Below, one piece after another: positions 18,501 to 64,000 of a stretch of 64,000 nt of DNA. The notes under the pieces were generated by a model. The model worked only from the letters and a program-made list of their open reading frames with translations. It was not told the origin of the DNA and made no database searches. Where the stretch lies: positions 45,074,001-45,138,000 of the forward strand of contig NC_086383.1 in NCBI RefSeq assembly GCF_036588685.1. Reading direction: 5' to 3'. A program made the position numbers and the translations under genes. How positions within the stretch are numbered: position 1 is the stretch's first letter; each line of letters opens with the position of its first letter. Source of the stretch: Mytilus trossulus (Eukaryota).

Positions 18501-30570
<12,070 letters not shown>

Positions 30571-30730: not shown

Positions 30731-31410
30731 AAAAATCCCATCCAGCACACAAACCTATTGATAAATATAAATCCTGTGCGGCGCACAGACCTGTTAAAAG
30801 CTATAAATCCTGTGCGGCGCACAGACCAAGTGAAGATTATAAATCCTTTGCGGCGCACAGACCAAGTGAAGATTATAAATCCTGTGCGGCGCACAGACCA
30901 AGGGAAGATTATAAATCCTGTGCGGCGCACAGACCAAGTGAAGATTATAAATCCTGTGCGACGCACAGACCAAGTTAAGATTATAAATCCTGTGCGTCGC
31001 ACAGACCAAGTGAAGATTATAATCCTGTGCGGCGCACAGACCTGTTAAAAACTATAAATCCTGTGCGGCGCACAGACTTGTTGAAAACTATAAATCCTGT
31101 GCGATGCACAGACCTGTTAAAAACTATAAATCCTGTGCGACGCACAGACCAAGTGAAAACTGTAAATCCTCTGTGGTGCACAGACCAGGTGAAAACTGTA
31201 AATCCTCTGTGGTGCACAGACCATGTGAAAACTGTAAATCCTCTGTGGTGCACAGACCAGGTGAAAACTATAAATCATGTGTGTCGCACAGATTAAGTGT
31301 AGACTATCTATCCCGTGCGGCACACAGACCAGGTAAAGATTATAAACAATGTGTGGTGCAGACCAGATAAAGTTATAAATCCTGTTAGCTGCACAGACCA
31401 GGTGATGATA
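30731..31410. repeat. 36-bp minisatellite (about 19 units), each unit with the palindrome CTGTGCG-g-CGCACAG
   Basis: Unit ATAAATCCTGTGCGGCGCACAGACC(AAGTGAAGATT/TGTTAAAAACT); homogeneous core with degenerate edge units. Confidence 0.95.
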
Positions 31411-33349
31411 ACAAGTACTGTATGGTACATAAAATAGAAGACAATAACGTATCCTGTGAAATACACTTAGTTGTAGTTTGAAATTAATATGAATTTTCAT
31501 ACTGAGGTTGTTAAATTGTCTCATTGGCAATTTACACAGCTCTCGATTTACTTTTGAACATGAATGTTAAAATTATTTGGTTGTACTTTTAATGTACTAA
31601 ATTACAAGATGCTTCTTTGAACATAGAAAATTACAAAATGTCAGTTCTATGATATATTTATTTCATATTTGTGTATTTTACTCTTAATATATAATTTTAT
31701 TGTGTCACACGTTAAAGTTACATACAATATAGACAACTCTTACTGTAATTAGCTTGATTATAATAAATAAATGAATATGTCTTACAATAATAATGATCAG
31801 CATTAACAATTCACAGAAAATTCATTACATCATCAAACTGGTGATGTGAGTTACATAGTAATTTATTTTAGGTTAAAATGCAGATGCTGTATGATCTAAG
31901 ATATAAGCATTTGAAAATTATCTAAGGGACATAATATTCAAGACAAAATTAAGGCTGTTTATTTTTTTTCTTAATAATGACTTTGAAAATAATAATTAAC
32001 AAAACATTTATTATGTTATTAAAAACAGTAGAAATGACCACATGGTGATGTTGCATTATGAAAACACTACAAAGTAATCCAGTCTGAAAAGGGAAATGGT
32101 GAAACACTTTAAATATCTATATCTACTGCATTGAGCTAAATAAAAAGTAGCACATGGACCCCCATATTTTACTTTTGCAAAAGGCTTAAGATTGCTTCAA
32201 AGATGTTAGATCAAACAGCTTTCAATATAATAATTCTGTATGACATGACAAAATATAGAAATGTAAGGTATATCTTCATGTATTTACAGGAATCTCGATA
32301 ACAGTTTTAGAATGAAAGAAATTAATATAATGTCTATGAAAGTTAACCATAAAAACATTTTGTTCTTCTTTGCTTGTTTCAAAGTTAACATATAAAATAT
32401 TTTGTTCTTCTTTGCATATTACAGAATTGCACATTAAACTTGACTTGAAAAAAAATGTAATTGTAGGATCTTTACTGTGTGATTTGGCTTAAATTTCCAA
32501 TGACTAAGTGTTCAATACATATTATAACATTTATGACCATGACATGTAGATATATATGGAGAATGTAATGTGAGTTTAAAAATGAAAAGGAAATTACAGT
32601 ATGTATTCTACTCTTACTATATACATCCATGTTCATAGATCAAACAATTTATTGACATCTATTTAGCAAAAATAAATCTGTTTAAGACATTTGTATAAAT
32701 ACAATTATCAGCAAAGTATTTATAAATTAACTACATCTACAATGAATAAAAATATAACTGATTATTGATAAGAAATAGAAAATTTCACAATTGACATGAA
32801 GGTTAAAACTATTAACTATATATGTACTGTGAGCAAAAAGCTCCTTGTTTTGTATTTGAAACCCCAAAATCAATTTGAACATAAATTAGAATAGGGGGTG
32901 CACAATGGCATTATAACTTGAGGATTTTGAAAAAGTGTCTATAAGTTTTTGTGTGTTAGGAAGAGTTATGGATACAAAATGTGTATCCCCATCAAAGAAA
33001 ATAGTCCATAAAATTGTTATAATATGTGTCTTCTTATTTGACAATAACAATGTTCATGTTTTTGTAAAAAATAAACCCCTAAAAATAACTTTTTTTTTAA
33101 ACAAAAAAGTAGGTGTACAAAGGTATGATGAAAGAAATAATATCTGAATTGAATGGTTTTGTTGGAATATTCGTATGAAGCATTGCTAAAATTGAGACAT
33201 TCATTTGTGGACAAAATTAATTATTTCCGAAAAATGCATGAGAAAATCTAATACTATAAAGAAATGTTATAAAATAAGACTACAGGTAAATAACTTTTAA
33301 AAAAACCCAGCTTAATACAAGTTATACCTGAATAAATGTTTTCATATTT

Positions 33350-35900
33350 TCATATTTGCTAATTTGTACATTTTTGTCTTTTAAGTCCATTGAATAATAT
33401 TTTTTTTTGTTGGATAATAGCAAAAATTTTACATGATTTCCACTGTTGATCCCAGCCAGATTTTTTTGTAAGAGCTTTATCTAGAATAGATTTATGAAAA
33501 TCAATAACTCTCTGGACTTCATCAGTAATTACAATTTCCTGTCCCTTAGTTTTTATATCAATATTAAAATTTTGAGGAGCTTTATCTAGAATAGATTTAT
33601 GAAAATCAACAACTCTGTGGAATTCCTCATTAATTACAATTTCCTTTCCCTTAGTTTTAATATCAATATCAAAGTTTTGAGTTGAAGTTTTATGAGCAGG
33701 TGTTTGAGTCTCGACTTCCAAGTCATCTCTATTAGCATTTTCCAGTGCAGGACATTGTGAATATATATTTTTATCTGATTTTTAAGTCAAAATATTTTTG
33801 TCTTTTATAAGAGCTTTATCTAGAATAGATTTTGAGTTGAAGGTTCAGGAGCAGTTGTTTGTGTCTCAGCTTCCTAGTTATGTCTATTAACATTTTCATA
33901 AGCAGGGCATTGTGAATAAATTTATATTTTTGTAACATTTGTATCTGACATTTAAGTCAAAGTTAATATTTTTGTCTTTTGTACATGTTGTAAGGGCTTT
34001 ATCTGGAATAGATTTATGAAAATCAATAACTCTGTGGGCTTCCTCGGTAATTACAATTTCCTTTCCCTTAGTTTTGACTTATAAATTACATTAAAGGTTT
34101 ATTTTACTTTTCAAAGCCAATACTATTGTAAGACCTTTATCTGGAATAGATTTATGAAAATTAACAACTCTGTGGGCTTCCTTACTAATTACAATTTCCT
34201 TTCCCTTAGATTTTATATCAATATCAAAATTTTGAGTTGAAGTATCATGAGCAGGTGTTTGAGTCTCGACTTCCAAGTCATGTCTATTAGCATTTTTATG
34301 AGCAGGACATTGTGAATGAATGTATATTTTTTTAACATTTTTTTCTGACATTTAAGTCAAAGTAAATATTTTTGTCTTTTGTAAGAGCTTTATCTAGAAT
34401 AGATTTAAGAAAATCAATAACTCTGTGGGCTTCCTCATTTATTACAATTTCCTTCCCCTTAGTTTTGACTTATAAATTACATTAAAGGTTTATTTTACTT
34501 TTCAGACCCACTTCTTTTGTAAGAGCTTTATCTAGAATAGATTTAAGAAAATCAATAACTCTGTGGGCTTCCTCAGTTATTACAATTTCCTTTCCCTTAG
34601 TTTTGACTTATAAATTACATTAAAGGTTTACTTTACTTTTCAAACCCACTTCTTTTGTAAGAGCTTTATCTAGAATAGATTTAGGAAAATCAATAACTCT
34701 GTGGGCTTCCTCAGTTATTACAATTTCCTTTCCCTTAGTTTTGACTTATAAATTACATTAAAGGTTTATTTTACTTTTCAAACCCACTTCTTTTGTTAGA
34801 GCTTTATCTGGAATAGATTTATGAAAATAAACAACTATCTGGGCTTCCTCAGTAATTACAATTTCCTTTCCCTTAGTTTTGACTTATAAATTACATTAAA
34901 GGTTTATTTTACTTTTCAAAGCCAATACTATTGTAAGACCTTTATCTGGAATAGATTTATGAAAATTAACAACTCTGTGGGCTTCCTTACTAATTACAAT
35001 GTCCTTTCCCTTAGATTTTATATCAATATCAAAATTTTGAGTTGAAGTATCATGAGCAGGTGTTTGAGTCTCGACTTCCAAGTCATGTCTATTAGCATTT
35101 TTATGAGCAGGACATTGTGAATGAATGTATATTTTTTTAACATTTTTTTCTGACATTTAAGTCAAAGTAAATATTTTTGTCTTTTGTAAGAGCTTTATCT
35201 AGAATAGATTTAAGAAAATCAATAACTCTGTGGGCTTCCTCATTTATTACAATTTCCTTTCCCTTAGTTTTGACTTATAAATTACATTAAAGGTTTATTT
35301 TACTTTTCAGACCCACTTCTTTTGTAAGAGCTTTATCTAGAATAGATTTAAGAAAATCAATAACTCTGTGGGCTTCCTCAGTTATTACAATTTCCTTTCC
35401 CTTAGTTTTGACTTATAAATTACATTAAAGGTTTACTTTACTTTTCAAACCCACTTCTTTTGTAAGAGCTTTATCTAGAATAGATTTAGGAAAAATCAAT
35501 AACTCTGTGGGCTTCCTCAGTTATTACAATTTCCTTTCCCTTAGTTTTGACTTATAAATTACATTAAAGGTTTATTTTACTTTTCAAACCCACTTCTTTT
35601 GTTAGAGCTTTATCTGGAATAGATTTATGAAAATAAACAACTATCTGGGCTTCCTCAGTAATTACAATTTCCTTTCCCTTAGTTTTAATATCAATATCAA
35701 GTTTTGAGTTGAAGGTTCAGGAGCAGGTGTTTGTGTCTCAGCTTCTGAGTCATATCTATTAACATTTTCAGGAGCAGGATATTGTGAGTAAATGTAAAAA
35801 ATTTGTCTGTTTTTATCTGACGTTTAAGTCGAAATATTTTTTATTTTTATTTTGTGGGACAATGTAAAAAATTTCATGTGATTTCCACTGTTGACCCAAT
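33350..35900 (-). repeat. Complex tandem array derived from the last exon and 3' flank of the ParB-like gene (138-bp units inside an 805-bp higher-order duplication)
   Basis: GTAAGAGCTTTATCTAGAATAGATTT variants recur at about 34381, 34519, 34657, 34795 and again 805 bp later. ORFs 34091-34351 and 34896-35156 differ by one residue. All copies resemble 36100-36300 (KGKEIVITEEA..VIDFHKSILDKALTK). Confidence 0.93.
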
Positions 35901-36126
35901 CAAAATTACATTTCAAAATAAGTTTGTCAACTCCTATCTACTAGTGTAGTCCTCGCTTAATCTTAATTGATTATTCTATTTTTACAAAGAAAATGATATT
36001 TATTTTCAGATTATTTTTTTTTAATCTATTACACTACAGCTAGTGTATATAATGGAGGACATTATAATGAAGCTTTTAGAAAATTGTTTAGAAGTGAATT
36101 ATAAATTACATTAATATTTAATTACT

Positions 36127-39100
36127 TTACTCTTCCAAAGGAAGTACTTTTGTAAGAGCTTTATCTAAAATAGATTTATGAAAATCAATAACTTTCTGTG
36201 CTTCCTCAGTAATTACAATTTCCTTTCCCTTACTTTTTATAACAATATTTATTTGAAAATTTTGAGGTGAGGATTGAGTAACAGGTGGTTGTGTATCAGC
36301 TGCTGCTGCTTCATCTATGTCCACTTGTTCTGGAGCAGAAACTTCTGACTCTTCACCATTACTACACACTGGTATTGCTGTCAGTGAGTTGCAGTAGGCA
36401 GTGAAAACTTCAGGAACAAATTTGCGTCTGATTTTTTTTTCTGAAATAAAAGATGATTATCAAACTCATTTTTTTCAAAACCAATGTCTAGATCTTATTT
36501 ACAGCTCTTCCATAAAAGCATGTAATCAACTTGCTTGCTTTGTTTGCTTGGATGTTTGCTAACAATAGGTAGGCAGAGTGTAATTTGTTGACAATAGACA
36601 AGCTGAACATATAAATCTTTTTCATCATATTGTGTTTTTTACTTTTAGTTACAATGTATAATTGTAAGGACTCCACTTAACTATAACAGATTTATATGTG
36701 TGATGAATGTGCAAGAAATAAAATTATTTGTAATTCATATATTTTCTCTTTGATCCTACTGCCTAATATATTCAAGTATCAACATAGTATACTGGCTGTA
36801 TCACTGAAAATATCAGGCAATACAGTGTGTGACGTCATAATTACCGATAAACTGATTAACAGGTAGTTTCGTTTTTGATAATGACGGGCTCGTCTAGATA
36901 TTCCACATGATATAGTCAGTATCAAAAATGAAACTATCTATTGTTCTATATTTAGCTGTGTTTTTTTTTCTTGACGCAACAGTTAGTTTGAGTACAGTTT
37001 CTCAATTCAATCCAAACGTCAAATTTTTTATTATTATATGAATATTTTTTTTAGATAGCTCCTTTGTTTTATACATGTTTATTATATACTTAGCATTGAT
37101 ATAACAGCTTTTGCGTATGTGAAATGAGCAGAAGTTCACAAGCCATAATTTCACACTTGGGCTTATAACCCATATCAGGTGCATCTCATGCAATAACCCC
37201 ATAATAGTGCCTCTCATGCAAGTGACAATATCACCAGATGTTTGCTCTCCCTTGATGATCATGATTATTTCAAACAGGTTTGACTGAACATATGATTCCT
37301 ATATTTAACAAGAGGCTGTCACAACGACAGCAAACTGGATTGATTAATTAATATTTATTTGTGTCCTGGCAATATCACAAGAACCATAACTGATGAATGG
37401 TGAAAGTGAAAATCGTCAATATCAAATTTGGCCTCCATTTTGTAGTCAGTATCAACATATTAAAATTTGAAAAGCTTAGATTGAATGGTTCATGTGTAAA
37501 TGCAACAACGTGAATGGAAACATCATTTTACGATCTTTCAAGAACCATAACTCCTGAATGGTAAAAGTCAAAATCCTCATTATTGAACTCGAACTCTATT
37601 TTGTCATCGGTAACAACATATTAAAATTTTAAAAGCTTTGGTTGAACGGTTCATGAGTTAATGCACGGACACAACTGGAAACTCCATTTTTCAATCATTC
37701 AAGAACCATAACTCCTGAACGGTAAAAGTCAAAATTGCCATTATTGAACTTGACCTTCATTTAGTTGTCAGTTACAACATATTAAAATTTTAAAGCTTTG
37801 GTTGAATGGTTCATGAGTTAATGCACGGACAACATTTGATTGCCGCCCACTCGCCGTACATCCCCAAATCAATAACCGACATTTTTGTCACAAAAATCAG
37901 GTTTAAAATAGTTATGTTCTTACCAACTAGTTCTTCAATTTTACTTGACACCTCAGGGTATGTTTTGTAAGCCTCTTCCCAGGTGTTTATCTTAACTGTC
38001 TGACATAAAAATGTCTGTAAGCTTTTTCGAGCCTTCAACCTATCGACAGTTCCAGCTGCTTTTTCCAAACCCTCTTCGGCAGCAAGGCTTAAGTACGAAA
38101 ATGTGGCCTCCTCAGAAAGGCCTTGTAAAGCCCGAAATAGCTGTAACAGAAAATGGTTTTAAAAGTAATTTAATAACAAAATTGAATAATTCAGATGATT
38201 TAAATAAAAGTTATATGGTGTAGTAAATTCTTTACATAGAGTGTCATGTGGTAACCAGGTTACCCCTATGGTTTACTAAGGGTTTGTAAATTTCATAGTG
38301 GTTCATGACGTCACTTCTATTGATGTTATTGTGTTTTATACTGCAATCAGCTAGTTAACTGTACAGATAAAGCTATACGTATAAACGTTACCTTTATACG
38401 TCAATGACCCCAACTGACCTATTAGCCCCGCCTCCTTATTGTATTTCATCAACAACATCACGTCACGACCATGACAACGTAAAGTAACAATGGTCAAACT
38501 TATTCAATTTAAACTTTTATGTCTTCAAATTGGTTATTTATATATCATGTTTATCAAATGTTATTAATTAAGTTCATTTTACCTTTCTAATTCCTTAATA
38601 CGCCAATGTCTAGCCACCTGGACTAGGCTCATAGGGAAATACCCCAAAATGGTACCTCAAGAGGGAAATTCCAAACACTTTTTTTAACAATTTTTGTTAC
38701 ATGTTTTTTTCATTTTTCATTTTTTTTTTCGATTTCAGTATAAAAACAATATACGTATAGTGTCTTGAAATATGAAATTTATTTGTATTTGGCACGAAAC
38801 GGGAAAATGCTCGGTAGAACATCGCATTTTCCCGTTTCTAAGCCTCATGCAAATAAATTTCATATTTCAAGGCACTATACGTATATTGTCTAATTATTGT
38901 TTATTTTTCCACAAAAGTCACCATCAATCAGTGCACAGTAGACATATTTTCTTGTTATTTATACTGTTGGCAGTATTTCATTCCTTTTTTATTTCGCATA
39001 CCTTGTTTCAGCTTGATAAAGAAATCAAAGTGTAAAACCATGAACAGTTGGGGTAGATTTCAGATTATATAAAAAAAAATACCATGTCTCAAATTAAATC

Positions 39101-42100
39101 ATTGACACATCATACCTTTGTTAGACTTTGCCAATATGATTTATATACATTTATAGAATGTACAGAAAATAAGTAACAACCTTAGACAGTGCAAATCTAA
39201 TCCAGCAACTTTTGTGAAAGGCACAAACTTACTGATTTTGTTAGAAAATAAACATATATTTTACAAACCTTTTGTGGAATATTCTTATGACATCCCTGCT
39301 TAGCTTCAAATTTTTTCACTAAACTAGTAAAATAAACAAAACATCTCTCAGAGTATGACGCCATGCTTTTAATAGTACTGCAGCTGTCTTCAGTTAAGTT
39401 CTGGAGGAAAAAATAAATATATAACATTAAATGCCAATGTAGAATTAACAAATTTTACATTCATCCTAAAATTTGCTACAAAGGCTATTTCAGGTAAATA
39501 CTTCATAAAACTAAGTAGGAGTTATTTGATCCAACTGATTCTAGTTACATATTGTACACATTCATTTTTTATATAATTAAGGATGTAAGCTTTCTCGTTT
39601 GAATTGTTTTACGTTCCCATATCGGGGTCTTTTATAGGTGACAATGCGGTAAGGGCTCTGCTCATTGTTGAAGGATGTACTGTGACCGATAGTTTTTAAT
39701 GTATGTGTCATTTTGGTCTTTTTTGGGCAGTTGTTTCATTGGCAATCATAACACATGTTCTTTTTTATATGACCCTAAATATTATGATCACTCTTGTTTG
39801 AAATACTGGAAGATTTACATGGACCATGTTCTATACACTCTTCAAAACTTTGACTTCTTGGGAATTTGTCACCATATTTAATATCACTCATGACATTTAT
39901 CTCATAGTTAAACAGTTCATTTTTTTGACATTTGTGTTTCATGTAAAAATAGCTACTGTGTTATATGTGTTTGCCTTGATGTACAAATATTCAAATTTGA
40001 TTATGAAAATTGAAATAACTATATCATTCCGTGCTGGGTATATTCCAATCTTGACATGGACAGGCATATCATTTGTCAACATTTTACACCTTGCATATCC
40101 TCGATATAAATATATTGAAAATATACTGTCTATTCCCATGTCGAATGGACATAAATCACAGTATGATACAAGTTAAACTATAAGCTTCTGCTCACTGATG
40201 ATACCTCCGCCACAAGTGGATAATTTAGTCTAAAAATAGGTATTAGTGGAAGCAGGAACAGGAAGTTTGAATCTGAAACTGATCACAGTGCATAGCTGAC
40301 TTATATAAAGATAATTTGTCTCATATTCATCTTTTTTTCTCTCTCTCTAAAATGTTGGTGAAAAATTTCAACGAGTGACCGAACAACACATTTATTTACA
40401 AATGCTCAAAGCACAGGAGTTAATTATCAGTGTTGTTCTGTCACAAGTTGAATATTTTTCGATTTATGATTTCTTTAATTAGTTTTTCTTTTGATTACAT
40501 TGTCTAATGATTTTTTTTTTAAAGAAATTTATGTAAAAACATGTAAGGAACTATATCTTTTTTCTATGCATTCATAATTTGTTATAATCCGCAGTTATCT
40601 ACAACACCTATTGTTGTATGACATTAGAGAGGGAAATAACCACCTCTATTTCGCATGTGAAATTATCGGTTTTCAATGAATGACCGAACAACACTTTTAT
40701 TTACGAATGTTGAAGTGCATGTCAGAGTTAATTATCAGTGTTTTTCAGTCACAAGTTAAATATTTTTTCGATATTTGATTTCTTTAATTAGTTTTTCTTT
40801 TGATTACATTGTCTAATGATTTTTTTTTTTAGAAATTTATGTAGAAAATGTAAGGAACTATTATAACTTTCTACTACACATTGACAATTTGTTTTCATCT
40901 GACGTTATTGACCTCTTGACAACGCCTATAGTTGTATGACGTCAGAGAGTGAAATAACCATGCTTATTTTGCATGTGAAATTATCGGTTTTTATGTAATT
41001 GGGAAATCAATGTAATTCATTGCAACCAATGTAATAATATTTGTTAATGATTTTCTTCTTCATTGTATGATACGTGTGTTTCTTTTAGTGTTGGTCCAGT
41101 ACTGTAAATTATTTATTATGCACTTCAAACTTTGGACTGATACTATATGAAGTTCAATTTTTCTATGCTTTTACGGAATAAGAAATCTAAAAATATGTTG
41201 ATTAAAAGAGTGAAATAGGTTTTTGGTAAAACGACTTACTTGAAATGTCACTGGCAAAGTTGACATTTGAAAGTTATGTCTGTTGCCTAACAGTCTTGCT
41301 TCCTCTGGTGTTAAACCTACATACACTGACACATCTAATTCTCTGCAAAGGAATTACTAAATAAATAATTAACATCCAATATTTGTGAGCTAGGCATATG
41401 AATTTAGTCTTGCTCAAGTTATGCATGCACACTCTTTGAGTATTTTTCTATATTTTAAGAAAACTTTTGTGTGTAAAAATCTAAAAACCCATATATCTTA
41501 TTTTATTCAAATTTCAGCTATATTCATATGCTCTGGCCAAAAGTATCAGTCACCTGCATTTGTAAATGTTAGATCTGTAAATTTGCTTTCCAAATTTATG
41601 GTTCTTCCCTCTCCGGGTTTCCAACCCATGCTACTGTGATATTGTGACACCAAATCGCCTGCACTGCAGCCGTATATTATATGTTATTCAGGTCTCAGAC
41701 AGGGTATATACTGTGACATTCCCGGCTTTGAGTTTATATCCCCTGAGCCAAAGGGGAAGGGGATATTAGCCCTAAGCCGGGAATGTCACAGTATATACCC
41801 TTTCTGAGACCTGAATTACACATATATTACGGATAACCACTGACTTAATGCTATTCCAGTGCAGGTATTTATTGAAAACACATATATATAAGTTGAAAAA
41901 CCCAACCTTATATGTTCGGTATACGTGAAGGATTTTCTAATTTGCTGTGATCATAATTTTATCGTGTATGTAATAATTTATAATAACACTTTTAACATTA
42001 AATTTAAGTATTAAAAGTGTAAATTGCGTGTTTTTGTATCAAAAATGTATTATTGACTGAAGCACGTCATTATTTTTTCTGTGAATCTCTGATAGTCTGA

Positions 42101-45767: not shown

Positions 45768-46079
45768 CTTGAGTTTGATTATTGACAGACGATCAGCTGC
45801 ACGTGACCAATTTACAACCACAACACAAACAAAGCGAGCAAAGTAGTTCCATCAACAATGCGCGAATTCATATGCTGTTGCCGACATTTAGCATGTTTGA
45901 AGTAAAACGCAAACAAGTTATTTCATTAACTTTATCACAATTACATCAAATATATATCTGGAGTAATAATATCTTTAGAAGTTACTTATATTACTCCACG
46001 AACGAAAATAGAATTTGGAAATCCGCACGCGATTTGACTTCCAGATCGTCTGAACAGACTGCTGAACAGCTGAAGGAAT
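45768..46079. promoter_or_regulatory. Divergent promoter between the ParB-like gene and the transposase gene
   Basis: The inferred ATGs (45767 minus, 46080 plus) are 312 bp apart. The region is CpG-richer than its flanks, with CAGCTG and CACGTG E-box motifs at about 45794-45805. Confidence 0.65.
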
Positions 46080-55000: not shown

Positions 55001-58000
55001 TATTTATCTGTCATAATTGACTCAATGGACCAAAGCAAAACTCAGCTTCCACACTTCCTGTATAAATCAAAGTTTACAGGTAATATGTGGAAGCTGAGGG
55101 TCCACTTAATTGGGGTTTTGCTTCATGGAATAAGCACATATGGATTTTTTGACTTATTTGAATATCCTCACTCAGCAAATCTCACAATCTCAACATTGAT
55201 AAACATATTGGCAGGTTTGGAAGACATCCCACCTGTCCTTTACCTGCAAATGGACAATTGTTACAGGGAAAATAAGAACAGGTTATTTACTTTTATTTAA
55301 CTCTATGACCATTGATTGAAAGAATGTTACAATATAACAAAATTTAAGAAAACAATACATAAAAAATCCTGAAATTTGTGCTTTGTGAATTTTATTCATG
55401 AAATCTTCAATGAAATTTATCAATTTAAAGTTTGAAAATATGATCTGTCATTGAAAAAGCACTTTTTAAAATACAGAAATGCTCAATAAAAAAATGCAAC
55501 TTGTATTTTTAATTAAAAAGAGATAATGAACCTATCGGAAGATATTTTGTTGAGTTCAAATACTGTTCGATGTAGGAATTTATTTCTTATGTTTATTGAT
55601 ATCAAATATATGTATTACAGATTTGTCTTTGGATTCCTTTCATTGTTAGTGGAGCTGGGTGTATTTAAAAAAGTTAAAGTGTCATTCCTTATGGTAGGAC
55701 ATACACATGAAGACGTTGACCAGGTATTTTCAAGGTACGTAATATATAACATAATGCTAAAATTACCTTTTTGCTATCCTTGACCAGCAAAGTAAGACCT
55801 ACAAATAAGTTAACATGACCAAAATGTCAGTCAACCCCTTAAGGAGTTATTGCCCTTTATAGTCAAATTTTATCAACTTTTCTTCTTTTTTTGTAACTTG
55901 AACAAAAATCTTCTTCTCTGAAACTGCATGGCCAAATTTAACAAAACTTTGCCACAATTATCATAGTGGTATATAGTTTAAAAGATGTGTTCCATGACCC
56001 TGCCTACCAAACAAAATGGCTGACATGATTAAAATTAGAACATAGTGGTAAAATGCAGTTTTTGATTTATATCTTTGAAACTAAGACATTTAGGGCAAAA
56101 CTTTCAAGATTTAAATGTCCATCAGAATAAGATCTATCCCCTCACAAATGATGAATCTGACAACTTGTTGTTGGGTTGCTGCCCTAAAATTGGTAATTTT
56201 TAGGAAATTTTGCAGTTTTTGGTTCATATCTTGAATACTTTTAAAGATAAGATAAGCTGTAAACAGCAATAACGTTAGCAAAGTAAGATATACAAATAAG
56301 TCAGCATGATCAAAATTGTTAGAGGACCCCTTAAGGAGTTATTGCCCTTTATAGTCAACACCTTTTCTTCATTTTTGTAACTTGTACTAAATCTTCTTTT
56401 CTATAACTATGGGCCAAATTTACCCAAACTTGGCCACAATTATTACTAGGGTATCTATTTAAAAAAGTGTTAAATGACCCCACCTACCAACCATGATGAC
56501 TGACATCAGTAAATACAAGTGAGCAACACAGGCTCTTGAGAGCCTCCACTGGACGTTAAGCAACCAACAATCAATCAATCATTCTAATGCAACAAAGTTT
56601 GTAACGTTCATTTTGATTGGATAACGTCACTTTCTTACATGGCATCAATTGACAATTGATGCTATGGGACGTACGCGCAAGCGCAGACGGCATATGACAG
56701 ATTTTAAATACATGTTTTAACGTTGTTTTCTCTCAGTTTCATTAGAATGGAGATAACAATATTGTATTTTAAGCTCCGACGGCATCAATTTGGGATTTGA
56801 TGGTCGCAAATACCCGTTTACTGTCTCCGCTAACGCGTCGCCAGTAAACTTAATTTGCGACCATCAAATCCCCAATTGATGCCGTCGGAGCTTAAAATAC
56901 AATACAGTTATCTCCTAAATCTTGAGAGCCTCTAGTTAAGATTAGAATATGAAAAGTAAATAAAGGCACTACAGACACCAAGTGATGGCAATAACTCACA
57001 CAAACCTTTAAGGCTAAGGTCAGAAAACACAAATGTTAACTGTTTTACACATGTCTGTCATTCTGTCCATCTGTTTTATGAATACTTTGACACATTTTTC
57101 TGAGCAACTGAATAATAAGCTTTTCTAAAATTTGATATCAATGTTTATATGAGTGAGCTAGACTGTAATGCTTTTTTCAGATTGACTAAACAGCAACTTC
57201 CTGTTTAACAAACACTAAAAATTTCTACACATGACCAAAAAAAAAGTGAACTATGTTCTGATGTATGGTTGCCGTGTTTTCTTCATGCTACAATTCTGTC
57301 TTAATTTAATTGCAGATTTTCTTCCTGGTTGGCAAGACAGGCAGTTCTTACATTGCCCAAACTTATGAGAGCTTTTGAGTCATGCACTACTCCAAATCCA
57401 GTGTCAGTTCAAACATCAAAAGTGTGGGATATAGCTGGCTGGATATCTCAGTATCTGAACAAAATGTGTAACCATTCATACCCCCACATATTTAAGATAA
57501 TCAAGAAAGATGAGAAAACAAGACTGTTTTACAAAAAATGGTCAACTGACAAGGTATAATTAAATACTTTCAAATACTAACAAATTATGTAATAAATGAA
57601 TTAGTTATTTATTTTGTTTGAATGTTATGAATCAGTTATTTATTTTGTTTGAATGTAATGATTTGATTTAAAGTACTTGGAATCCATCAGTGTAGAATCT
57701 TTTGCTGTTTGTCAACCACAGCATTTTCATTTCAACATGTATCCTCAGTGATGGAGGATCCAAGACTTGAAAAGGGGTGCCCACTACTTTTATTTATCCT
57801 GTAAGCAGTAAGGGGAATAAATAGGGGCATCCCGTACAAACTTTGTATAACACTGTTTATGAACTTTTAGAAAATACACTTTCATCATTCTATTTATTTG
57901 GACCAACATATGTGAAAGATCTGTAATATTTAAAAATATTCTGTCAAGACAGAATGCCTTAATTTTCAGGAAACCTGGAGCACTTTTAATCTTATAATTG

Positions 58001-59099
58001 TAGAAGTTACATGTCAATACATTCAGTAATTTAAAAACGTCTGCTTCCTTATTAGCTCACCTGGCCTAAAAGGCCATGTGAGCTTTTCTCATCACTTGGC
58101 GTCCGTCGTCGTCGTTAACAATTTTTCAAACATCTTCTCCTCTGAAACTTAGCATGATTGTTCCTTAGTATATTCTGCACAAAGCATGCAAAGTGTGTGC
58201 TTGGATTTTTGATCCGTCAAAAAACATGGCCGCCGTTACTTAAAATAGAACATAGGGGTCAAATGCAGTTTTTGGCCTATATCTTAAAAACGAAAGCATT
58301 TAGAGCAAATCTTACATGAAGTAAAAATGTTCATTAGGTCAATATCTATCAGCCCTGAAATTTTCAGATGAATCAAACAACCCATTGTTGGGTTGCTGCC
58401 ACTTAATTGGTAATTTTAAGGAAATGTTGCAGTTTTTGGTCATTATCTTGAATATTATTATAGATAAAGATAAACTGTAAACAGCAAAAATTATCAGCAA
58501 AGTAAGATCTACAAAAAGTCAGCATGACCAAAATTGTCAATTGACCCCTTAAGGGGTTATTGTCCTTTAATGACAATTTTTCACAATTTATTCATCATAT
58601 TTGCTACCTTTAAAAAATCTTCTCCTCTAAAACTACTCAACCAAATTCAACCAAACTTCAACTGAATGATCAGTAGGGTGTATAAAATAAAATTTGTGCT
58701 TCAAAGAACATTTAAATTAATTGAAAAGCCAAAATAATCATTGATGAGAGATTTAACCAAAAAAAATCAGGTGAACGATTCAGGCTCTTGAGAGCCTCTT
58801 GTATTATGGTAACTGTCATCCAATCAGAACCCTTGATACACAAATTGCTTTAAAATTATTTACATACTGTAACAAAATGTGGTTAAAAATGTCAAATATA
58901 TTTCAGACTTGGCAAGAACCAGAGGAGCAGCTTCTACTTAGTGTTCCCACAGACTCTCCAAAAATAATAATTCCTGACTACAACAAAATAGACCTGGCCA
59001 AGCTAAAAAACGATATCACTGGTTCATTTTCATATTTCAAGAGAGAGGAAGATAAAAAGTGGTGGACTGATTTTTTCACAGATCTTTCTAGTAATAATG
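46080..59099 (+). CDS. Spliced DDD/E transposase-like protein (DUF7869 / Sola1-like), at least 13 exons and 650 aa, 3' incomplete
   Basis: Exons 46080-46125 (MADSDDYF..), 48571-48645, 49879-49953, 50980-51057, 51383-51475 (AT-hook-like RKRGRP), 52088-52259 (CCSMLC), 52740-52870 (VCLSAF...GIPKSTYY), 53244-53518, 54240-54361 (FSKCNKC...H), 54943-55281 (IIDSMDQSK ... LYLQMDNCYRENKNR), 55621-55734 (SFLMVGHTHEDVDQVFSR), 57316-57553, 58907-59099. All phases are consistent with no stop over 1951 nt, and the candidate acidic triad is intact. Confidence 0.88.
56749..56915. repeat. Long hairpin (about 167 bp) ending a short non-autonomous element; same architecture at 25389-25557, 36857-36944, 38746-38889 and 41672-41830
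   Basis: GGAGATAAC..ATTGTATTTTAAGCTCCGACGGCATCAATT / AATTGATGCCGTCGGAGCTTAAAATACAAT..GTTATCTCC. Confidence 0.85.
58048..58802 (+). mobile_element. HINE-type element (related partial copy at about 55780-56550)
   Basis: TTAGCTCACCTGGCC...(CGT)n...CAGGTGAACGATTCAGGCTCTTGAGAGCCTCTTGT; shares internal sequence with 55780-56550. Confidence 0.7.
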
Positions 59100-59596: not shown

Positions 59597-59598
<2 letters not shown>

Positions 59599-59631
<33 letters not shown>

Positions 59632-62600
59632 TTGTTTTTCAGTAGTCAGGCTTTTACAATCCCTTTACATCACCACCTGACTATGGTGTTAAGAGGTTTG
59701 ATATATATATATACAACAAAAAATTGACTACATTTTTTTCTTCTAATGTGAATATATATTATTTAAATATTAACATTATAATAAAAAGTGGAAAAGAAAC
59801 AATCACACACACATACACACACTCTCGCACTTGCATTAACATAACATAAATCAACTTGTGTATTGCAAAGAAAAATGTTATCTTTGTAAAGATCTGCTCT
59901 TTATGAACTGTAAGTTTCATTTTTTATTTTATATGATTTGAATCAAAAGTAATGGTGACTAATCAGTAAAAATGTAATCTAATGGGGCCCAGAATTTTTG
60001 AAAATAAGGTGTGGTACCATTTTTCTTTGCTATATAATGTTCATTTTCCTGATATTTTCTTATTTTTGCTAATAACCCTATAATACTTGGTTTCTTTTCA
60101 TACAATTTACATTTGTATATATAGTTCTTTGCAATAATAATAATCAAATTCAACAGTAAACTCTCATTTTGAAGACCAAGAAAAATGTGCTTCTTAGATA
60201 ATGTAAAGTTCACAAAATATCTTTTCAGTTTTTGTGAAAAAGTTTGCCATATAAAATGTGTTATTGGACATTCATAGAATAAATGCTCCATGGTTTCATC
60301 AGAAACCTTACAAAAAGTACAAAGCTTTGAATCTTTAAGTTTAACTTTATATAAGAAAGTGTTAGTTGCAATTATTCTATGTAAAAATTTATATTGAAAA
60401 GTTCTTAAATAAGTGTCTTTACATGATTTTCTTAAAATAACATAATATTCTGACCAATCTGCAATTTCAATACCTAGTGATTCCTCCCATTGTAAGAACT
60501 TTTCTGTTGGCAGTTGCACATTTCTGTCAACAAGATCTTTGTATACAAACTTTGCCTTTTTGTTACACAATAATCTTTCCAAAAAAATATCAATACAGTT
60601 AAAAGTTTCAAAATTTACATGAGCAATCTTTTCTTTAATATATTCTCTCATATACTTTGGAATGTTAGCAATGAGACCATAATACTTTAAAAAATTATTT
60701 GTTTGAAGTCTTGGTCCTATCTTATCAAAATTACAAAAGTCCTTAGTCTCTAAGTTAATAAGGTCAAACAAAGACTGCACTCCCCTTCTATGCCACTGAA
60801 TAAAATACGGAAAATCTACTAGAGGTGCGAAATTTAAAATATCTAATGACAAAATATCTTGAACAGAAATATTGGTAGCAGGCTTTGCTACATGAAAGCT
60901 AAAAAAAACATCCTTCCAAAAAGGATTGCTAAGACTATCAGAGATTTCTCTGAGTTTCTCCTTTTGAAAATGCAATACCCTTTCTCCACCATACTGTTCA
61001 AGGTTTTTTAATAATAATGATTGCCAACTACCATATAAATTGGATGAAAACCTCTTTATCCAGCCAATCTTAAGGTATATATTAAAATAATGTATATTAA
61101 TCATATTTAAACCTCCTTGTGGAATATCTCCGATTAAAGTACTTCGTCTAATTCGATCAGGTTTTCCATTCCATATGAATTGAAAGAATAAAGTATTCAA
61201 CTCATTTAATTTTGATTCTGGCAAGTTGGGTAGTGCAGTCAACAGGTGAATTAATTTTGGAAGTGCCAAAGTCTTGATAACAGTAATCTTTCCCATTAGG
61301 GTTAATTTTCTATGTTGCCAACTCTTAAGAATGCCTGACACTTCCTTTATCTTTTTGGAGAAATTAATTTCTGGCATACTATCAAGATCTAAAGAGAATT
61401 CAATTCCCAAAAGTTTAAAATTTGAATAGCACCACTGAAGTTTTAAATCAGGACAGAGAATCAGATCTGAATACTTTTTATTCCCAACCCACACAGCTTT
61501 AGTTTTAGAAGAATTAATTTTTAACCCAGATACTTTTTGGAATGAGTCGAAACAATTTAAAGTCTCCCTCAAAGATGTTTCAGTTCCATCCAAAACAAGG
61601 AAAGTGTCATCAGCATATTGACTCAAAAGGGATTCATTTTCATGAACAAAAGTTCCCTTTATTTTGGGGTTTGACCTTATTTTCATAGAAAGTAACTCAA
61701 CACCTATAATAAAAAGATAAGGGGAGAGGGGGTCACCTTGTCTACAGCTTCTCTCCAAATTAAAGAAGCTTGAAAGATGGCCATTATTTATAACACAACT
61801 TGATGCTTTCAAATAAAATACTTCAAACCATCTGCATATAGATGGCCCAAAATTGAAACTCTTCAATGCTTTTTTCAAAAAAGACCATTCAATAGAGTCA
61901 AAAGCCTTTTCAAAATCTACTAGTAGTAAAAGACCAGTTTTGTTATGCTTTTCCAAATAGTGCATCAAATCATACAATAGACGTGTATTCTCACCCATAA
62001 ATCTATCTTTAATAAAGCCTTTCTGACAGTCACTGATAATAGATGGTAAAACAGGTTTTATTCTATTAGCAATAACGGCAGAAGCAATCTTGGTGTCAGT
62101 ATTCATAAGGCTAATTGGGCGCCAATTAGCTAGATAACGTCTATCTTTATCTTCTTTTGGAATACAGGTAATGACACTTTGATACTGAAATTTAGAAAAT
62201 TCCCCATTTTCATAGCCAAAATATAATGATCTAAAAAGAAAAGGTCCAATATCTCGCCAAAAGACTTTGTAAAATTCTACAGTATACCCATCTGAGCCTG
62301 GACTCTTTCCATTTGACATAGATTTTAGAGATTCTGCACATTCTTTAAAAGAAATATTACCCTCACACAAATCCTTCTCTTCTTCTGTGAGTTTAACATT
62401 GTGCTTGAAAAAGGAATCATCATCACATTCCAGATTTTTACTTGAGTATAATGTTTTATAAAAATTCATTTCTTCTTGTAAAACTCTAGATTGATCTGAT
62501 ATATGTTTTCCATTTTCATCTATGAGCTCAGTTATCGTTTTTTTAATAAAATTTTTCTTTTCCAATTTACAAAAAAACTCTGAACACTTTTCCCCATTCT

Positions 62601-64000
62601 CTTGCCAGTTAGCGTGGGATCTTAAAAAAACACCTTCAATTTTTCTTTCTCTTATATTTTCTAATTCTAACTTTTTCTGGTTTAAAGCTGCATGAATTTG
62701 ACCATCAGGAGATATGTTCATATGATTTTCCAAACTTTGAATGTCATTTTCCAGTAAAAGTGTTGCAGCTTTTTCCTCTCTAGCTTTTTGAATACTGTAA
62801 CCAATAGACAAAGATCTAATTTTCATTTTTATCAACTCAAAAAATACTTGATCATTGCATGAGAGTTTAACATTTAACAGATCATCTATGTTGCCTGATT
62901 CATAATATTCTAAAATACTCTCATTTATACATGTTTTAACTTTTTTGATATAGTCTAAATCTCGCAACAGTTGGGAGTTAAATTTCCAATATCCCTTTCC
63001 CCGCTTTGCTAAACTGGCAGAAAAGGTGAAAGTTATAGCTGAATGATCTGTCTTATACCCAGGAATAATGTTAGTATTTTTCATGAGTGAAAACAGATCC
63101 TCTGTGACTAGAAAAAAATCAAGCCGACTTTGTTTTATGGGTGAGCATTGACGCCATGTATATTTTCTATCGTTTGGATAACAGGTCCGCCAAGGATCTA
63201 ATAACTCAAGACTTTCTACTATTTCTTCAATCTTTTTTCGTGAGTTTGGGTTTCTATTATGAATAATATTGTAAGTGTCTATGTTTGTATCTTGTACAAC
63301 ATTCCAGTCCCCACATAATAAAAAGCTAGTATTTGAAAATGATGCCATTTTCTTATAAATGTCATTAAAAACTGAAGGTTCATCAGTATTAAATCCATAC
63401 AAACAAACAAAAGTAATGCGTTGACTTGACAAGGATAAATCTAAGATAATATAACGACCATCTATATCAATAATAGAATTATGCACTTCAAAATCAAGAC
63501 CTAATTTGAACATAATACTGACACCTGCACTTTTGTTACTATGATGACTGAAAAAACATGTATTTCCCCATTCCTCTTCCCATTTTTTTTCAATATCTTT
63601 ATTACTATGGGTTTCTTGAAAGCAAATTACTGAAGCATTTTTGCCCTTCGCCCAATCAAAAACATCTGTTCTCTTTTTTGAATTAGAAAAAAGACCCCTT
63701 ACATTCATAGACAACACTGTTACAATATTATCCATTATCATATAAAACAAAACAATATTTCAAACTTGAGCAGATAAATTCTAACTTAAAAACCAATACA
63801 CAATCATAGTTTATACAATCATACACACATTCAACAATAAGATGACACTTTGGCATAGATACCTGTAAAGTCATTTTTGTACAACAAAATTTCATTTACA
63901 GTATGGCATTTAATTATTTACAATATAAAGATAGTTGTTTTCTAAAGACAATGTATTAATTAGTATATATATTTAGTTGAGAGATTCATGATAAGTAAAA
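59599..64000 (-). mobile_element. L1/Tx1-clade non-LTR retrotransposon with poly(A) tail; 5' part outside the window
   Basis: Poly-T at 59599-59629 on plus, 3' UTR 59630-59958, complete ORF2, AT-rich spacer upstream of ORF2. Confidence 0.93.
59959..63750 (-). CDS. L1-Tx1 ORF2: APE endonuclease, reverse transcriptase and C-terminal zinc finger, 1263 aa
   Basis: NVRGL, QETH, GDWN, SRLDFF, TDH (APE); KSPGSDG, WRPISL, LLVDFEKAFDS, RQGDPLSP, QYADD (RT); CTFC...ETMEHLFYECP. Confidence 0.97.
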   Translation of the reverse strand: MFYMIMDNIVTVLSMNVRGLFSNSKKRTDVFDWAKGKNASVICFQETHSNKDIEKKWEEEWGNTCFFSHHSNKSAGVSIMFKLGLDFEVHNSIIDIDGRYIILDLSLSSQRITFVCLYGFNTDEPSVFNDIYKKMASFSNTSFLLCGDWNVVQDTNIDTYNIIHNRNPNSRKKIEEIVESLELLDPWRTCYPNDRKYTWRQCSPIKQSRLDFFLVTEDLFSLMKNTNIIPGYKTDHSAITFTFSASLAKRGKGYWKFNSQLLRDLDYIKKVKTCINESILEYYESGNIDDLLNVKLSCNDQVFFELIKMKIRSLSIGYSIQKAREEKAATLLLENDIQSLENHMNISPDGQIHAALNQKKLELENIRERKIEGVFLRSHANWQENGEKCSEFFCKLEKKNFIKKTITELIDENGKHISDQSRVLQEEMNFYKTLYSSKNLECDDDSFFKHNVKLTEEEKDLCEGNISFKECAESLKSMSNGKSPGSDGYTVEFYKVFWRDIGPFLFRSLYFGYENGEFSKFQYQSVITCIPKEDKDRRYLANWRPISLMNTDTKIASAVIANRIKPVLPSIISDCQKGFIKDRFMGENTRLLYDLMHYLEKHNKTGLLLLVDFEKAFDSIEWSFLKKALKSFNFGPSICRWFEVFYLKASSCVINNGHLSSFFNLERSCRQGDPLSPYLFIIGVELLSMKIRSNPKIKGTFVHENESLLSQYADDTFLVLDGTETSLRETLNCFDSFQKVSGLKINSSKTKAVWVGNKKYSDLILCPDLKLQWCYSNFKLLGIEFSLDLDSMPEINFSKKIKEVSGILKSWQHRKLTLMGKITVIKTLALPKLIHLLTALPNLPESKLNELNTLFFQFIWNGKPDRIRRSTLIGDIPQGGLNMINIHYFNIYLKIGWIKRFSSNLYGSWQSLLLKNLEQYGGERVLHFQKEKLREISDSLSNPFWKDVFFSFHVAKPATNISVQDILSLDILNFAPLVDFPYFIQWHRRGVQSLFDLINLETKDFCNFDKIGPRLQTNNFLKYYGLIANIPKYMREYIKEKIAHVNFETFNCIDIFLERLLCNKKAKFVYKDLVDRNVQLPTEKFLQWEESLGIEIADWSEYYVILRKSCKDTYLRTFQYKFLHRIIATNTFLYKVKLKDSKLCTFCKVSDETMEHLFYECPITHFIWQTFSQKLKRYFVNFTLSKKHIFLGLQNESLLLNLIIIIAKNYIYKCKLYEKKPSIIGLLAKIRKYQENEHYIAKKNGTTPYFQKFWAPLDYIFTD

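What the first reader, a model, noticed from the sequence alone, without database searches (positions are those of the whole stretch)
30731..64000. Candidate giant, intron-rich, two-gene DNA transposon: DUF7869/Sola1-like transposase paired head-to-head with a ParB-like gene
Seen: two multi-exon genes that the ORF track shows only as fragments. Both splice into unbroken frames (8 exons, 458 aa, minus; at least 13 exons and 650 aa, plus), their ATGs are 312 bp apart, and a palindromic array lies at the left. Known: the D..MDQ / QxDNC..ENKN / GHTHEDxDQxFS motifs mark the DUF7869 RNase H-fold family related to Sola1 transposases, and ParB/Srx domains are nucleotide-binding modules of prokaryotic partition and mobile systems. 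Inference: a single mobile unit of over 28-33 kb with a dedicated ParB-like accessory gene. I do not know this architecture as a described transposon type, since Sola elements are described as compact single-gene elements.
Basis: partly seen in the sequence, partly recalled or inferred. Interest (0 to 1): 0.9.

Follow-up and report, generated by a model that had tools for sequence, protein, structure and literature searches.

The report
Giant two-gene mussel DNA transposon
This is a real, recently active 32-40 kb cut-and-paste DNA transposon of a mussel. It carries an intron-rich transposase gene head-to-head with a ParB-fold gene, a pairing so far described only in a brown alga.

Summary

**Borders.** The element starts at window 30598. 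It ends outside the window at coordinate 70405 (C11:45144405) and is 39.8 kb long. It has about 555-bp inverted ends, each with an array of 36-bp palindrome-bearing units, and a 4-bp duplication (GTTA).

**Copies.** Six other copies at unrelated loci are 99.2-99.7% identical. Four of six complete copies have perfect 4-bp duplications.

**Position.** It sits 27 bp into an MCM3 intron.

**Plus-strand gene.** It matches Pfam DUF7869 in three phase-compatible exons and continues beyond a nested LINE (59603 onward).

**Minus-strand gene.**
Three introns are confirmed by spliced contigs.
- This copy has lost a 35-aa exon that other copies and the 495-aa Mytilus edulis protein keep.
- Neither the exon pieces nor the database homologues of this gene match any Pfam ParB model.
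- Two structure models place it firmly in the ParB/Noc/KorB fold.
- An oyster homologue shows long-term conservation.

**Novelty.** A 21.5-kb Sola1 element of Ectocarpus with an opposite-strand ParB-like gene was published in 2025. The mussel element lacks that gene's methyltransferase domain and is, as far as I found, the first animal case.

**Not tested.** Sola1 membership of the transposase could not be tested directly.

The parts
30514..30570 (+). Host MCM3 exon ([18 protein letters not shown]). Its donor lies 27 bp before the element.
   Evidence: Sequence read. The neighbouring exon 29779-29946 matches the Pfam MCM P-loop domain at E 2.9e-10. The next MCM exon (YVLYTAPRAVATTGRGSSGVGLTAAV) lies about 690 bp beyond the right end.
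30594..30597 (.). Left copy of the 4-bp target site duplication, GTTA.
   Evidence: The same GTTA follows the right end at C11:45144406.
30598..31155 (+). Left terminal inverted repeat, starting AACACTGTATTATTTAAATTTGG.
   Evidence: Positions 1-554 align to the inverted right end at 86.6%. The terminal 168 bp are 97-100% identical at 13 ends of 7 copies.
30748..31346 (.). Subterminal array of 16.7 units of 36 bp, each with the near-palindrome CCTGTGCGGCGCACAGACC.
   Evidence: Tandem repeat score 692. There are 16 cores spaced 36 bp apart. The same consensus occurs at the right end and in the older C7 lineage. The right-end array has 11.2 units.
33464..35686 (-). Tandem, partly decayed copies of the 3' part of the last exon of the ParB-like gene.
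   Evidence: Tandem repeat periods of 105, 138 and 391 bp. tblastn of P0009 residues 423-494 hits about 10 times, several with stops.
36127..45767 (-). ParB-fold accessory gene, 8 exons and 458 aa in this copy.
   Evidence: Exons are 45767-45654, 44271-44080, 43661-43503, 42499-42354, 41342-41240, 39400-39269, 38140-37925 and 36441-36127, all GT..AG and in frame. Spliced contigs confirm three introns. It is colinear with the M. edulis protein P0009.
40361..40379 (.). Deletion point. A 526-bp piece carrying exon 6 (35 aa, QKVEQARLYFKAG...INKT) is missing here.
   Evidence: The piece is present in copies C6b and C9. The exon is found at 100% in both and is absent from the window.
38326..38915 (.). 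Nested MITE-like repeat inside an intron of the ParB-like gene.
   Evidence: More than 40 copies genome-wide at 96-97% with inverted ends. It is shared by C6b and C9 and absent from the older C7 copy.
45768..46079 (.). The 312-bp spacer between the two divergent start codons; presumed bidirectional promoter.
   Evidence: ATG positions. Contigs cover 45074-46125.
46080..59099 (+). The part of the DUF7869 transposase gene that lies in the window. The gene continues beyond a donor at 59100.
   Evidence: The exon 1 donor at 46125 is seen in contigs. The last in-window exon ends in phase 1 at a GTCAGT donor. Candidate terminal exons lie in the right 4.9 kb of other copies (L017:~470-620 and 2011-2367).
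54943..55281 (+). DUF7869 exon holding the first two catalytic acidic motifs (IIDSMDQ, LQMDNCYRENKN).
   Evidence: Pfam PF25273 at E 5.8e-23, profile positions 4-77. Junctions.
55621..55734 (+). DUF7869 exon holding GHTHEDVDQVFS.
   Evidence: PF25273 at E 4.3e-18, profile positions 75-113. Junctions.
57316..57553 (+). DUF7869 exon, C-terminal part of the domain.
   Evidence: PF25273 at E 5.6e-15, profile positions 119-192. Junctions.
55785..56546 (.). Nested repeat inside a transposase intron.
   Evidence: More than 30 copies genome-wide at about 90%. It is shared by C6a, C6b and C1.
59603..64000 (-). Nested LINE, specific to this copy. Its poly(A) abuts 59602 and it runs past the window end.
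   Evidence: The ORF 59959-63750 has endonuclease, RVT_1 and zf-RVT domains. No other copy has this piece.

Best explanation
**What it is**

A young family of giant cut-and-paste DNA transposons of a Mytilus genome. The genome is most probably M. trossulus.

- The ancestral element is about 32 kb. The window copy has swollen to 39.8 kb through nested insertions.
- Each end is a roughly 555-bp inverted repeat. It consists of about 150 bp of unique terminus followed by 11-17 units of 36 bp with a near-palindromic core.
- Insertion duplicates 4 bp of AT-rich target.
- Two intron-rich genes are transcribed divergently from a 312-bp spacer.

**How it most likely works**

- Plus strand: a DUF7869 RNase H-like protein with D, D, E/D motifs. 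It is the only candidate transposase. Inferred: it cuts at the AACACTG termini and integrates with a 4-bp stagger, as Sola-superfamily enzymes do.
- Minus strand: a two-domain ParB-type protein with an N-terminal ParB/Srx nucleotide-binding fold and a helical DNA-binding part. The GERR motif is replaced by GGNH.
- Inferred, not shown: this protein binds the palindromic 36-bp arrays at both ends. It then helps pair or mark ends that lie 30-40 kb apart, or shields the element.
- Internally deleted copies that have lost one or both genes keep their ends and target duplications. They are presumably moved in trans.
For: **Mobile unit**
- There are 13 near-identical termini in 7 copies.
- The 4-bp duplications are GTTA/GTTA, AATA/AATA, TATT/TATT and TAAA/TAAA, plus TAAG/TAAA. 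By my own calculation from base composition, the chance of 4 perfect matches out of 6 is about 3e-8.
- Flanks are unrelated and single-copy.
- Copies are 99.2-99.7% identical over 14-25 kb.

**Both genes travel together**
- C6b holds every exon of both genes; the window copy, C6a and C9 hold parts of both.
- Diverged pairs in the same divergent arrangement lie at C9:14199616(-)/14213627-14216324(+) and at C11:41370379(-)/41412595-41417874(+).

**Transposase**
- DUF7869 scores are above the Pfam cut-off in three exons.
- Intron positions are shared by all copies.

**ParB fold**
- Foldseek top hits are ParB, Noc and KorB, with E 3.5e-4 to 7e-4, probability 1.00 and about 250 aligned columns.
- VIA-align gives PadC Z 8.6, pNOB8 ParB Z 8.4 over 211 residues, sulfiredoxin Z 7.3 and Spo0J Z 6.1.
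- A first model of a 46%-identical homologue gave the same result.
- An independent ESM Atlas model has ParB_N + HTH_ParB clusters as its structural neighbours.

**Expression and conservation**
- Spliced contigs occur in three runs.
- An oyster homologue is colinear over its whole length at 32-34% identity.

**Precedent**
- Ectocarpus Sola1-1_Ec32 (PMC12477816).
Against: - No Pfam ParB model matches any exon or any full-length homologue. A profile search against PDB sequences also finds none. ParB identity therefore rests on predicted structures with mean pLDDT 56-62.
- The nucleotide-binding arginines of ParB are absent.
- Binding of this protein to the arrays is pure inference. The transposase could equally be what reads the arrays.
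- Only one fetched copy has both genes complete. Copies without the ParB-like gene still have duplications, so the gene may be dispensable.
- Exon and intron divergence against the old C7 copy are alike.
- One copy (C1) has no matching duplication.
- Homology of DUF7869 to curated Sola1 transposases was not tested.
- The runs laid are only guessed to be RNA.
Confidence: 0.8

Rival explanations
1. The ParB-like gene is a passenger. It was a captured or hitch-hiking gene carried by a giant transposon, with no part in transposition, like genes in Pack-MULEs or other giant elements.
For: Deleted copies lacking it (C1, C14, C6a) still have ends and mostly have duplications. The window copy has lost an exon. 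There is no excess exon conservation against the C7 copy. The Ectocarpus paper notes that many giant elements carry accessory genes of unknown function.
Against: The same divergent pairing recurs in two older lineages of this genome, where the ParB-like exon is 45-47% identical. It also recurs in a brown-algal Sola1 family. The protein is conserved between mussels and an oyster. It is spliced and expressed.
Confidence: 0.2
2. The element is not a Sola1 relative. It belongs to another superfamily, or to a new one, that also makes 4-bp duplications. A CACTG-ended CMC/Chapaev-like group is one example.
For: The termini read AACACTG..., reminiscent of CACTA/CACTG ends. The duplications do not follow the AWWT pattern given as the Sola1 hallmark (PMC3845634). 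No direct comparison with Sola1 transposases was possible.
Against: DUF7869 is not one of the Pfam families of CMC transposases. The duplications are 4 bp with a central WW in every case. In 2017 the Sola RNase H domains matched no Pfam family (PMC5751038), which is compatible with a later DUF entry. A Sola1 element with a ParB-like partner gene exists.
Confidence: 0.25
3. The repeated 30-kb blocks are segmental duplications of a host locus, not transposition products.
For: Copies are few and very similar.
Against: Homology stops sharply at identical inverted termini. Flanks are unrelated on different chromosomes. Four perfect 4-bp duplications are present, and one insertion splits an MCM3 intron cleanly.
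Confidence: 0.02

Closest known systems
Sola1-1_Ec32 of Ectocarpus (Dinatale et al., Genome Biol 2025, PMC12477816)
   Same: It is a giant DNA transposon (21.5 kb). A ParB-like gene is transcribed on the strand opposite the transposase. Nested TEs are shared among copies.
   Different: The algal protein is 1104 aa and is fused to an N4/N6 DNA methyltransferase. The mussel protein is 458-495 aa, and no PF01555 match exists anywhere in the genome. The host here is an animal. The element is larger, at 32-40 kb. The 36-bp palindromic end arrays are described here only.
Sola1 transposons as curated in animals (Bao et al. 2009; bivalve library of PMC10294476)
   Same: They have a 4-bp target duplication, inverted ends and an RNase H-like acidic-triad transposase.
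   Different: Curated bivalve Sola1 elements average 5.4 kb with a single ORF. This one is six times longer, has two genes and many introns. Its duplications are NWWN rather than AWWT.
Bacterial ParB/Noc/KorB CTP-dependent DNA clamps
   Same: The predicted two-domain fold is shared: an N-terminal ParB/Srx domain plus a helical DNA-binding domain. Palindromic candidate sites are arranged in arrays on the same element.
   Different: There is no sequence-level match. GERR is replaced by GGNH, and the ENxxR box by GNRHN. There is no ParA partner. The gene is eukaryotic and has introns.
Other giant eukaryotic DNA transposons (KDZ, giant EnSpm, Teratorn; review PMC6431247)
   Same: They are tens of kilobases long, carry accessory genes, and give rise to internally deleted derivatives.
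   Different: The transposase family differs. The 2019 review mentions neither Sola, ParB nor molluscs.

Membership tests
Pfam DUF7869 (PF25273) | Match to the family model above its gathering score (26 bits) | tested here: met
   Three consecutive exons score 81.9, 66.0 and 55.9 bits. They cover profile positions 4-192 of 192.
Sola superfamily (Sola1) | 4-bp target site duplication | tested here: met
   Four of six complete copies have perfect 4-bp duplications and one has 3 of 4.
Sola superfamily (Sola1) | AWWT target preference (given as the Sola1 hallmark in PMC3845634) | tested here: inconclusive
   The observed duplications are GTTA, AATA, TATT, TAAA and TAAG/TAAA. The centre is always WW, but the outer bases are not A..T. 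Only six sites were available.
Sola superfamily (Sola1) | Transposase homologous to curated Sola1 transposases | not testable with these tools
   No Sola1 reference sequence or profile is held. No paper mentions DUF7869. Acidic motifs with about 38 residues between the second and third are visible in the exons.
Sola superfamily (Sola1) | Terminal inverted repeats | tested here: met
   The ends align over 554 bp at 86.6%, and the first about 135 bp are nearly identical.
ParB/Srx superfamily | Sequence match to ParB_N (PF02195) or to solved ParB/Srx chains | tested here: not met
   There is no hit for the exons, for P0002/4/6/8/9/10/11, for the six-frame genome scan, or for profiles A1 and A2 against PDB sequences.
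ParB/Srx superfamily | ParB/Srx fold of the N-terminal domain | tested here: met
   The best matches are PadC Z 8.6 (rmsd 2.8 over 97 residues), sulfiredoxin Z 7.3 and Atu1540 Z 6.8. Foldseek probability is 1.00 for more than 20 ParB/Srx chains.
ParB/Srx superfamily | Helix-turn-helix DNA-binding domain following the N domain, as in ParB/Noc/KorB | tested here: met
   Alignments of about 250 columns to KorB (target TM 0.61), Caulobacter ParB (0.63) and Noc (0.55). pNOB8 ParB aligns over 211 residues. This rests on a predicted model only.
ParB/Srx superfamily | GERRxRA CTP-binding motif | tested here: not met
   The equivalent stretch reads LLGGNHLVAA in all seven homologues that cover this stretch.
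Giant Sola1 with ParB-methyltransferase accessory gene (Ectocarpus type) | ParB-like gene on the strand opposite the transposase inside one element | tested here: met
   The genes are divergent with ATGs 312 bp apart, inside one TIR-bounded unit.
Giant Sola1 with ParB-methyltransferase accessory gene (Ectocarpus type) | DNA N4/N6 methyltransferase domain fused to the ParB-like domain | tested here: not met
   PF01555 has no match in the whole genome. The full-length homologues have no Pfam domain.

The most novel reading that the evidence does not exclude
The ParB-fold protein loads on the 36-bp palindromic arrays at both ends, as ParB does on parS. It then bridges or marks ends that are 30-40 kb apart. 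On this reading, ParB-assisted transposition is the trait that lets one Sola1-related lineage grow giant. The pairing would be ancient, since it is shared by brown algae and bivalves.
Probability: 0.3. Interest if true: 0.8.

Novelty: new variant of a known kind. Interest (0 to 1): 0.62.

Why it matters
Giant DNA transposons are rare in animals, and how their distant ends are brought together is not understood.

- **A tractable system.** This family is recent, with copies more than 99% identical. Its borders are exact and its derivatives are deleted in different parts. It offers a candidate protein and a candidate site array to test.
- **A wider pairing.** The pairing of a Sola1-type transposase with a ParB-type protein was known from one brown-algal family. 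[quoted passage not shown] This case extends the pairing to Metazoa. It also shows that the ParB module can stand alone, without a methyltransferase.
- **Tolerance by the host.** It documents a 40-kb insertion 27 bp from a splice donor of MCM3, an essential replication gene.
- **Annotation.** It gives the Pfam family DUF7869 a concrete genomic context as a transposase.

Tried and rejected
**Searches that found nothing**
- Exon-by-exon Pfam scans of the ParB-like gene, up to E 10.
- PF02195 and PF01555 six-frame scans of the genome.
- Profile searches against PDB sequences. The only hit was a chance ferrochelatase match at E 0.07.

**Tests that gave no answer**
- Homodimer prediction of residues 95-410 of P0009 returned 'no answer' (score 0.00). 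It counts neither way.
- Exon versus intron divergence against the old C7 copy was uninformative. Both are 7-12%.
- The empty-site search found that both flanks occur once only in the assembly, so no alternative haplotype was seen.

**Literature**
- Yuan and Wessler 2011 and Bao 2009 could not be opened.
- The term DUF7869 occurs in no paper.

The neighbourhoods of the M. californianus, M. edulis and oyster homologues therefore could not be read.
The diverged pairs on C9, C11, C7 and C10 are therefore known by coordinates only.

- Joining was done only inside a script, to count frame and stops.
- The full 13-exon transposase model was not rebuilt.
- The segmental-duplication reading was rejected on the termini and duplications.


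Full report
**Setting**

The window is C11:45074001-45138000 of a 1.3-Gb, AT-rich genome (31% G+C).
- A protein found later, Mytilus trossulus LOC134721749, sits on a contig of 91,445,414 bp. That is exactly the length of contig C6 here.
- The host is therefore most probably M. trossulus.

Yes.
- Three open pieces on the plus strand match Pfam DUF7869 far above its cut-off: 54944-55300, 55526-55783 and 57329-57559. They cover consecutive profile positions 4-77, 75-113 and 119-192.
- Their borders are canonical and phase-compatible: AG|54943...55281|GT, AG|55621...55734|GT and AG|57316...57553|GT. A further exon, 58784-59099, ends in phase 1 at a GTCAGT donor.
Eight GT..AG exons join to 1377 nt, giving 458 aa without a stop (the join was made only inside a script to count the frame).
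- The two start codons, 45767 and 46080, are 312 bp apart.
- The left array is 16.7 units of 36 bp, with a conserved core CCTGTGCGGCGCACAGACC.

**Is it one mobile unit?**

Yes, and the borders can be given to the base.
- A DNA search of the genome found other copies of both halves. I fetched and aligned them.
- All copies begin at window 30598 with AACACTGTATTATTTAAATTTGG. The flanks before that point are unrelated.
- A search with the terminal 168 bp found 13 near-identical termini forming inverted pairs:

| Copy | Coordinates | Length |
|---|---|---|
| Window copy | C11:45104598-45144405 | 39.8 kb |
| C6b | C6:13608223-13640611 | 32.4 kb |
| C6a | C6:69514023-69544481 | 30.5 kb |
| C9 | C9:36079711-36105762 | 26.1 kb |
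| C1 | C1:68476957-68499194 | 22.2 kb |
| C14 | C14:76641454-76650039 | 8.6 kb |
| C7 (older, 86-89% identical) | C7:39224064-39258888 | about 35 kb |

- The right end of the window copy therefore lies at window coordinate 70405, outside the window.
- The 4-bp duplications are GTTA/GTTA, AATA/AATA, TATT/TATT, TAAA/TAAA, TAAG/TAAA and, for C1, AATT/ATAT. With this base composition a 4-bp match has a chance of about 0.007, so four of six is far beyond chance.
- Left and right ends of the window copy align over 554 bp at 86.6%.
- Copies differ from the window copy by 0.3-0.8% substitutions over 14-25 kb. Amplification is therefore recent.
- Both flanks of the window copy are unique in the assembly.

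**Where it sits**

- The exon 30514-30570 ([18 protein letters not shown]) ends 27 bp before the element.
- The previous exon matches the MCM P-loop domain.
- The next exon (YVLYTAPRAVATTGRGSSGVGLTAAV) lies about 690 bp after the right end.
- The motif GDPSVAKSQ is that of MCM3, by my own knowledge of the family.
- A roughly 0.7-kb intron has thus become about 40.5 kb.

**What is not ancestral**

- From 59603 to the window end there is a minus-strand LINE. Its ORF, 59959-63750, has endonuclease, reverse transcriptase and zf-RVT domains. Its poly(A) abuts 59602. No other copy has it.
- In the other copies another 4.9 kb follows position 59602. It holds two coding-looking pieces that are probably the last transposase exons, and then the right array.
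- Other nested repeats (38326-38915, 55785-56546, about 58049-58701) are shared by the young copies but missing from the older C7 or C4 copies. The element kept moving after being hit by other TEs.

**The second gene**

*Sequence searches find no ParB.*
- Exon-wise Pfam scans found nothing.
- A search of 1.84 billion representatives with the exon 43503-43661, followed by a profile search, found annotated relatives:

| Id | Species | Length |
|---|---|---|
| P0009 | M. edulis | 495 aa |
| P0002 | M. coruscus | 178 aa |
| P0010 | M. trossulus | 174 aa |
| P0004 | M. californianus | 361 aa |
| P0006 | M. galloprovincialis | partial |
| P0011 | the oyster Saccostrea cucullata | 492 aa |

- P0009 is colinear with the window exons at 87-100% identity, except for residues 239-273.
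- That 35-aa exon lies in a 526-bp piece present in copies C6b and C9 but deleted from the window at about 40361-40379. This explains 458 aa against 495 aa.
- The oyster protein aligns along the whole length at 32-34%. The motifs PPQxY, LPVLVDP, GGNHL and LGNxHN are conserved.

*Transcripts.*
- Spliced contigs in three runs of two organism labels join 44080|43661, 43503|42499 and 42354|41342, with CT..AC ends on the plus strand, which read GT..AG on the minus strand.
- Contigs also break at 46125, the donor of transposase exon 1.
- The runs are only guessed to be RNA, but spliced forms argue for it.

*Predicted structures do find ParB.*
- None of these proteins matches a Pfam family or a PDB sequence.
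- The model of P0004 has pLDDT 70-85 over residues 60-185. Its best matches are PadC, ParB, Noc, KorB and sulfiredoxin, with PadC Z 8.5, pNOB8 ParB Z 7.3 and sulfiredoxin Z 7.3.
- The better model of P0009 has pLDDT 70-89 over residues 100-410.
- Foldseek gives it six hits at E 3.5e-4 to 7.4e-4, all ParB, Noc or KorB with probability 1.00. Each aligns over about 250 columns, covering both the N domain and the DNA-binding domain.
- VIA-align gives PadC Z 8.6, pNOB8 ParB Z 8.4 over 211 residues, and Spo0J Z 6.1 over 163 residues.
- The ESM Atlas's own model has ParB_N + HTH_ParB clusters as its neighbours.
- The fold assignment is therefore sound. The ParB CTP-binding motif GERR is replaced by GGNH.

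**Do the genes belong together?**

- Among the fetched copies, C6b has every exon of both genes.
- The window copy has all in-window transposase exons and lacks one ParB exon.
- C6a lacks ParB exons 4-7. C9 lacks the catalytic transposase exons. C1 and C14 lack most or all of both genes.
- Two older lineages repeat the arrangement. In the first, a ParB-like exon at C9:14199616 (minus, 45% identical) lies 14 kb upstream of DUF7869 exons at C9:14213627-14216324 (plus).
- In the second, one at C11:41370379 (minus, 47% identical) lies upstream of DUF7869 exons at C11:41412595-41417874 (plus). Both have the same intron positions as the window gene.
- About 60 DUF7869 loci are spread over 1.3 Gb, so this is not chance.
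- Further diverged ParB-like genes on C7 and C10 had no listed DUF7869 neighbour. That list is a lower bound.

**What is known already**

- Sola transposons make 4-bp duplications, and Sola1 prefers AWWT (PMC3845634).
- Curated bivalve Sola1 elements average 5.4 kb (PMC10294476).
- In 2017 the Sola RNase H domains matched no Pfam family (PMC5751038).
- Decisively, Dinatale et al. 2025 describe giant Sola-1 elements in Ectocarpus. In the 21.5-kb Sola1-1_Ec32 family a gene on the strand opposite the transposase encodes a 1104-aa ParB-like plus DNA methyltransferase protein. [quoted passage not shown]
- The mussel genome has no PF01555 match.
- The 2019 review of giant transposons mentions neither Sola, ParB nor molluscs. 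No other paper in the library links them.

**Verdict**

- The element is larger than the window shows, and its last 4.4 kb in the window is a foreign LINE.
- The window copy's ParB-like gene is a deletion variant.
- The architecture has a published algal precedent, so this is a new variant of a known kind and probably the first in an animal.
- The proposed job of the ParB-fold protein, reading the palindromic arrays to handle very distant ends, is inference only.
- The homodimer prediction gave no answer.
- Sola1 membership fits the duplication length and the precedent, but was not testable.

Noticed in passing
window 33464-35686: About ten tandem, partly decayed copies of the 3' part of the ParB-like gene's last exon (motif KGKEIVITEEAxRVIDFHKSILDKAL) lie just downstream of the gene. 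All copies of the element share them. Whether they are coding, regulatory or binding sites is unexplained.
   Followed up: partly
window 38326-38915: A 570-bp MITE-like repeat with about 145-bp inverted ends. More than 40 copies across the genome are 96-97% identical, so this is a very young family.
   Followed up: no
window 48543-48659 and 49848-49973: Two copies of one candidate transposase exon (…SLDSDYxNxTDTxMMEMNxPDESDNGEGNKF) lie 1.2 kb apart. Copy C6a has only one, apparently through recombination between them.
   Followed up: no
window 1563-3296 (+): An intronless 578-aa ORF with two B-box zinc fingers and NHL repeats (TRIM-like), upstream of MCM3.
   Followed up: no
window 11148-12777 (+): A reverse-transcriptase fragment (RVT_1, E 4e-16) of another non-LTR element.
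   Followed up: no
G000 C7:65641938-65646729 (-), C7:65676691-65681482 (+), C10:73660683-73664994 (+): Three copies of a more distant ParB-like gene, about 48% identical in one exon. Two of them form an inverted pair 30 kb apart. No DUF7869 hit was listed nearby.
   Followed up: no
G000 C5:40887516, C8:41958077, C10:40653661: DUF7869 matches lying in uninterrupted 667-aa open frames. These are compact, intron-less relatives of the transposase in the same genome.
   Followed up: no
G000 C1:68476957-68499194: This copy has both ends but no matching 4-bp duplication (AATT against ATAT), and it has an 11-kb internal deletion. It may be a recombinant of two insertions.
   Followed up: no
G000 C3:27172906-27175326 (+): A fragment 79-83% identical to the C-terminal part of the M. 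californianus ParB-like protein. A second lineage of the gene is therefore present here only as a remnant.
   Followed up: no
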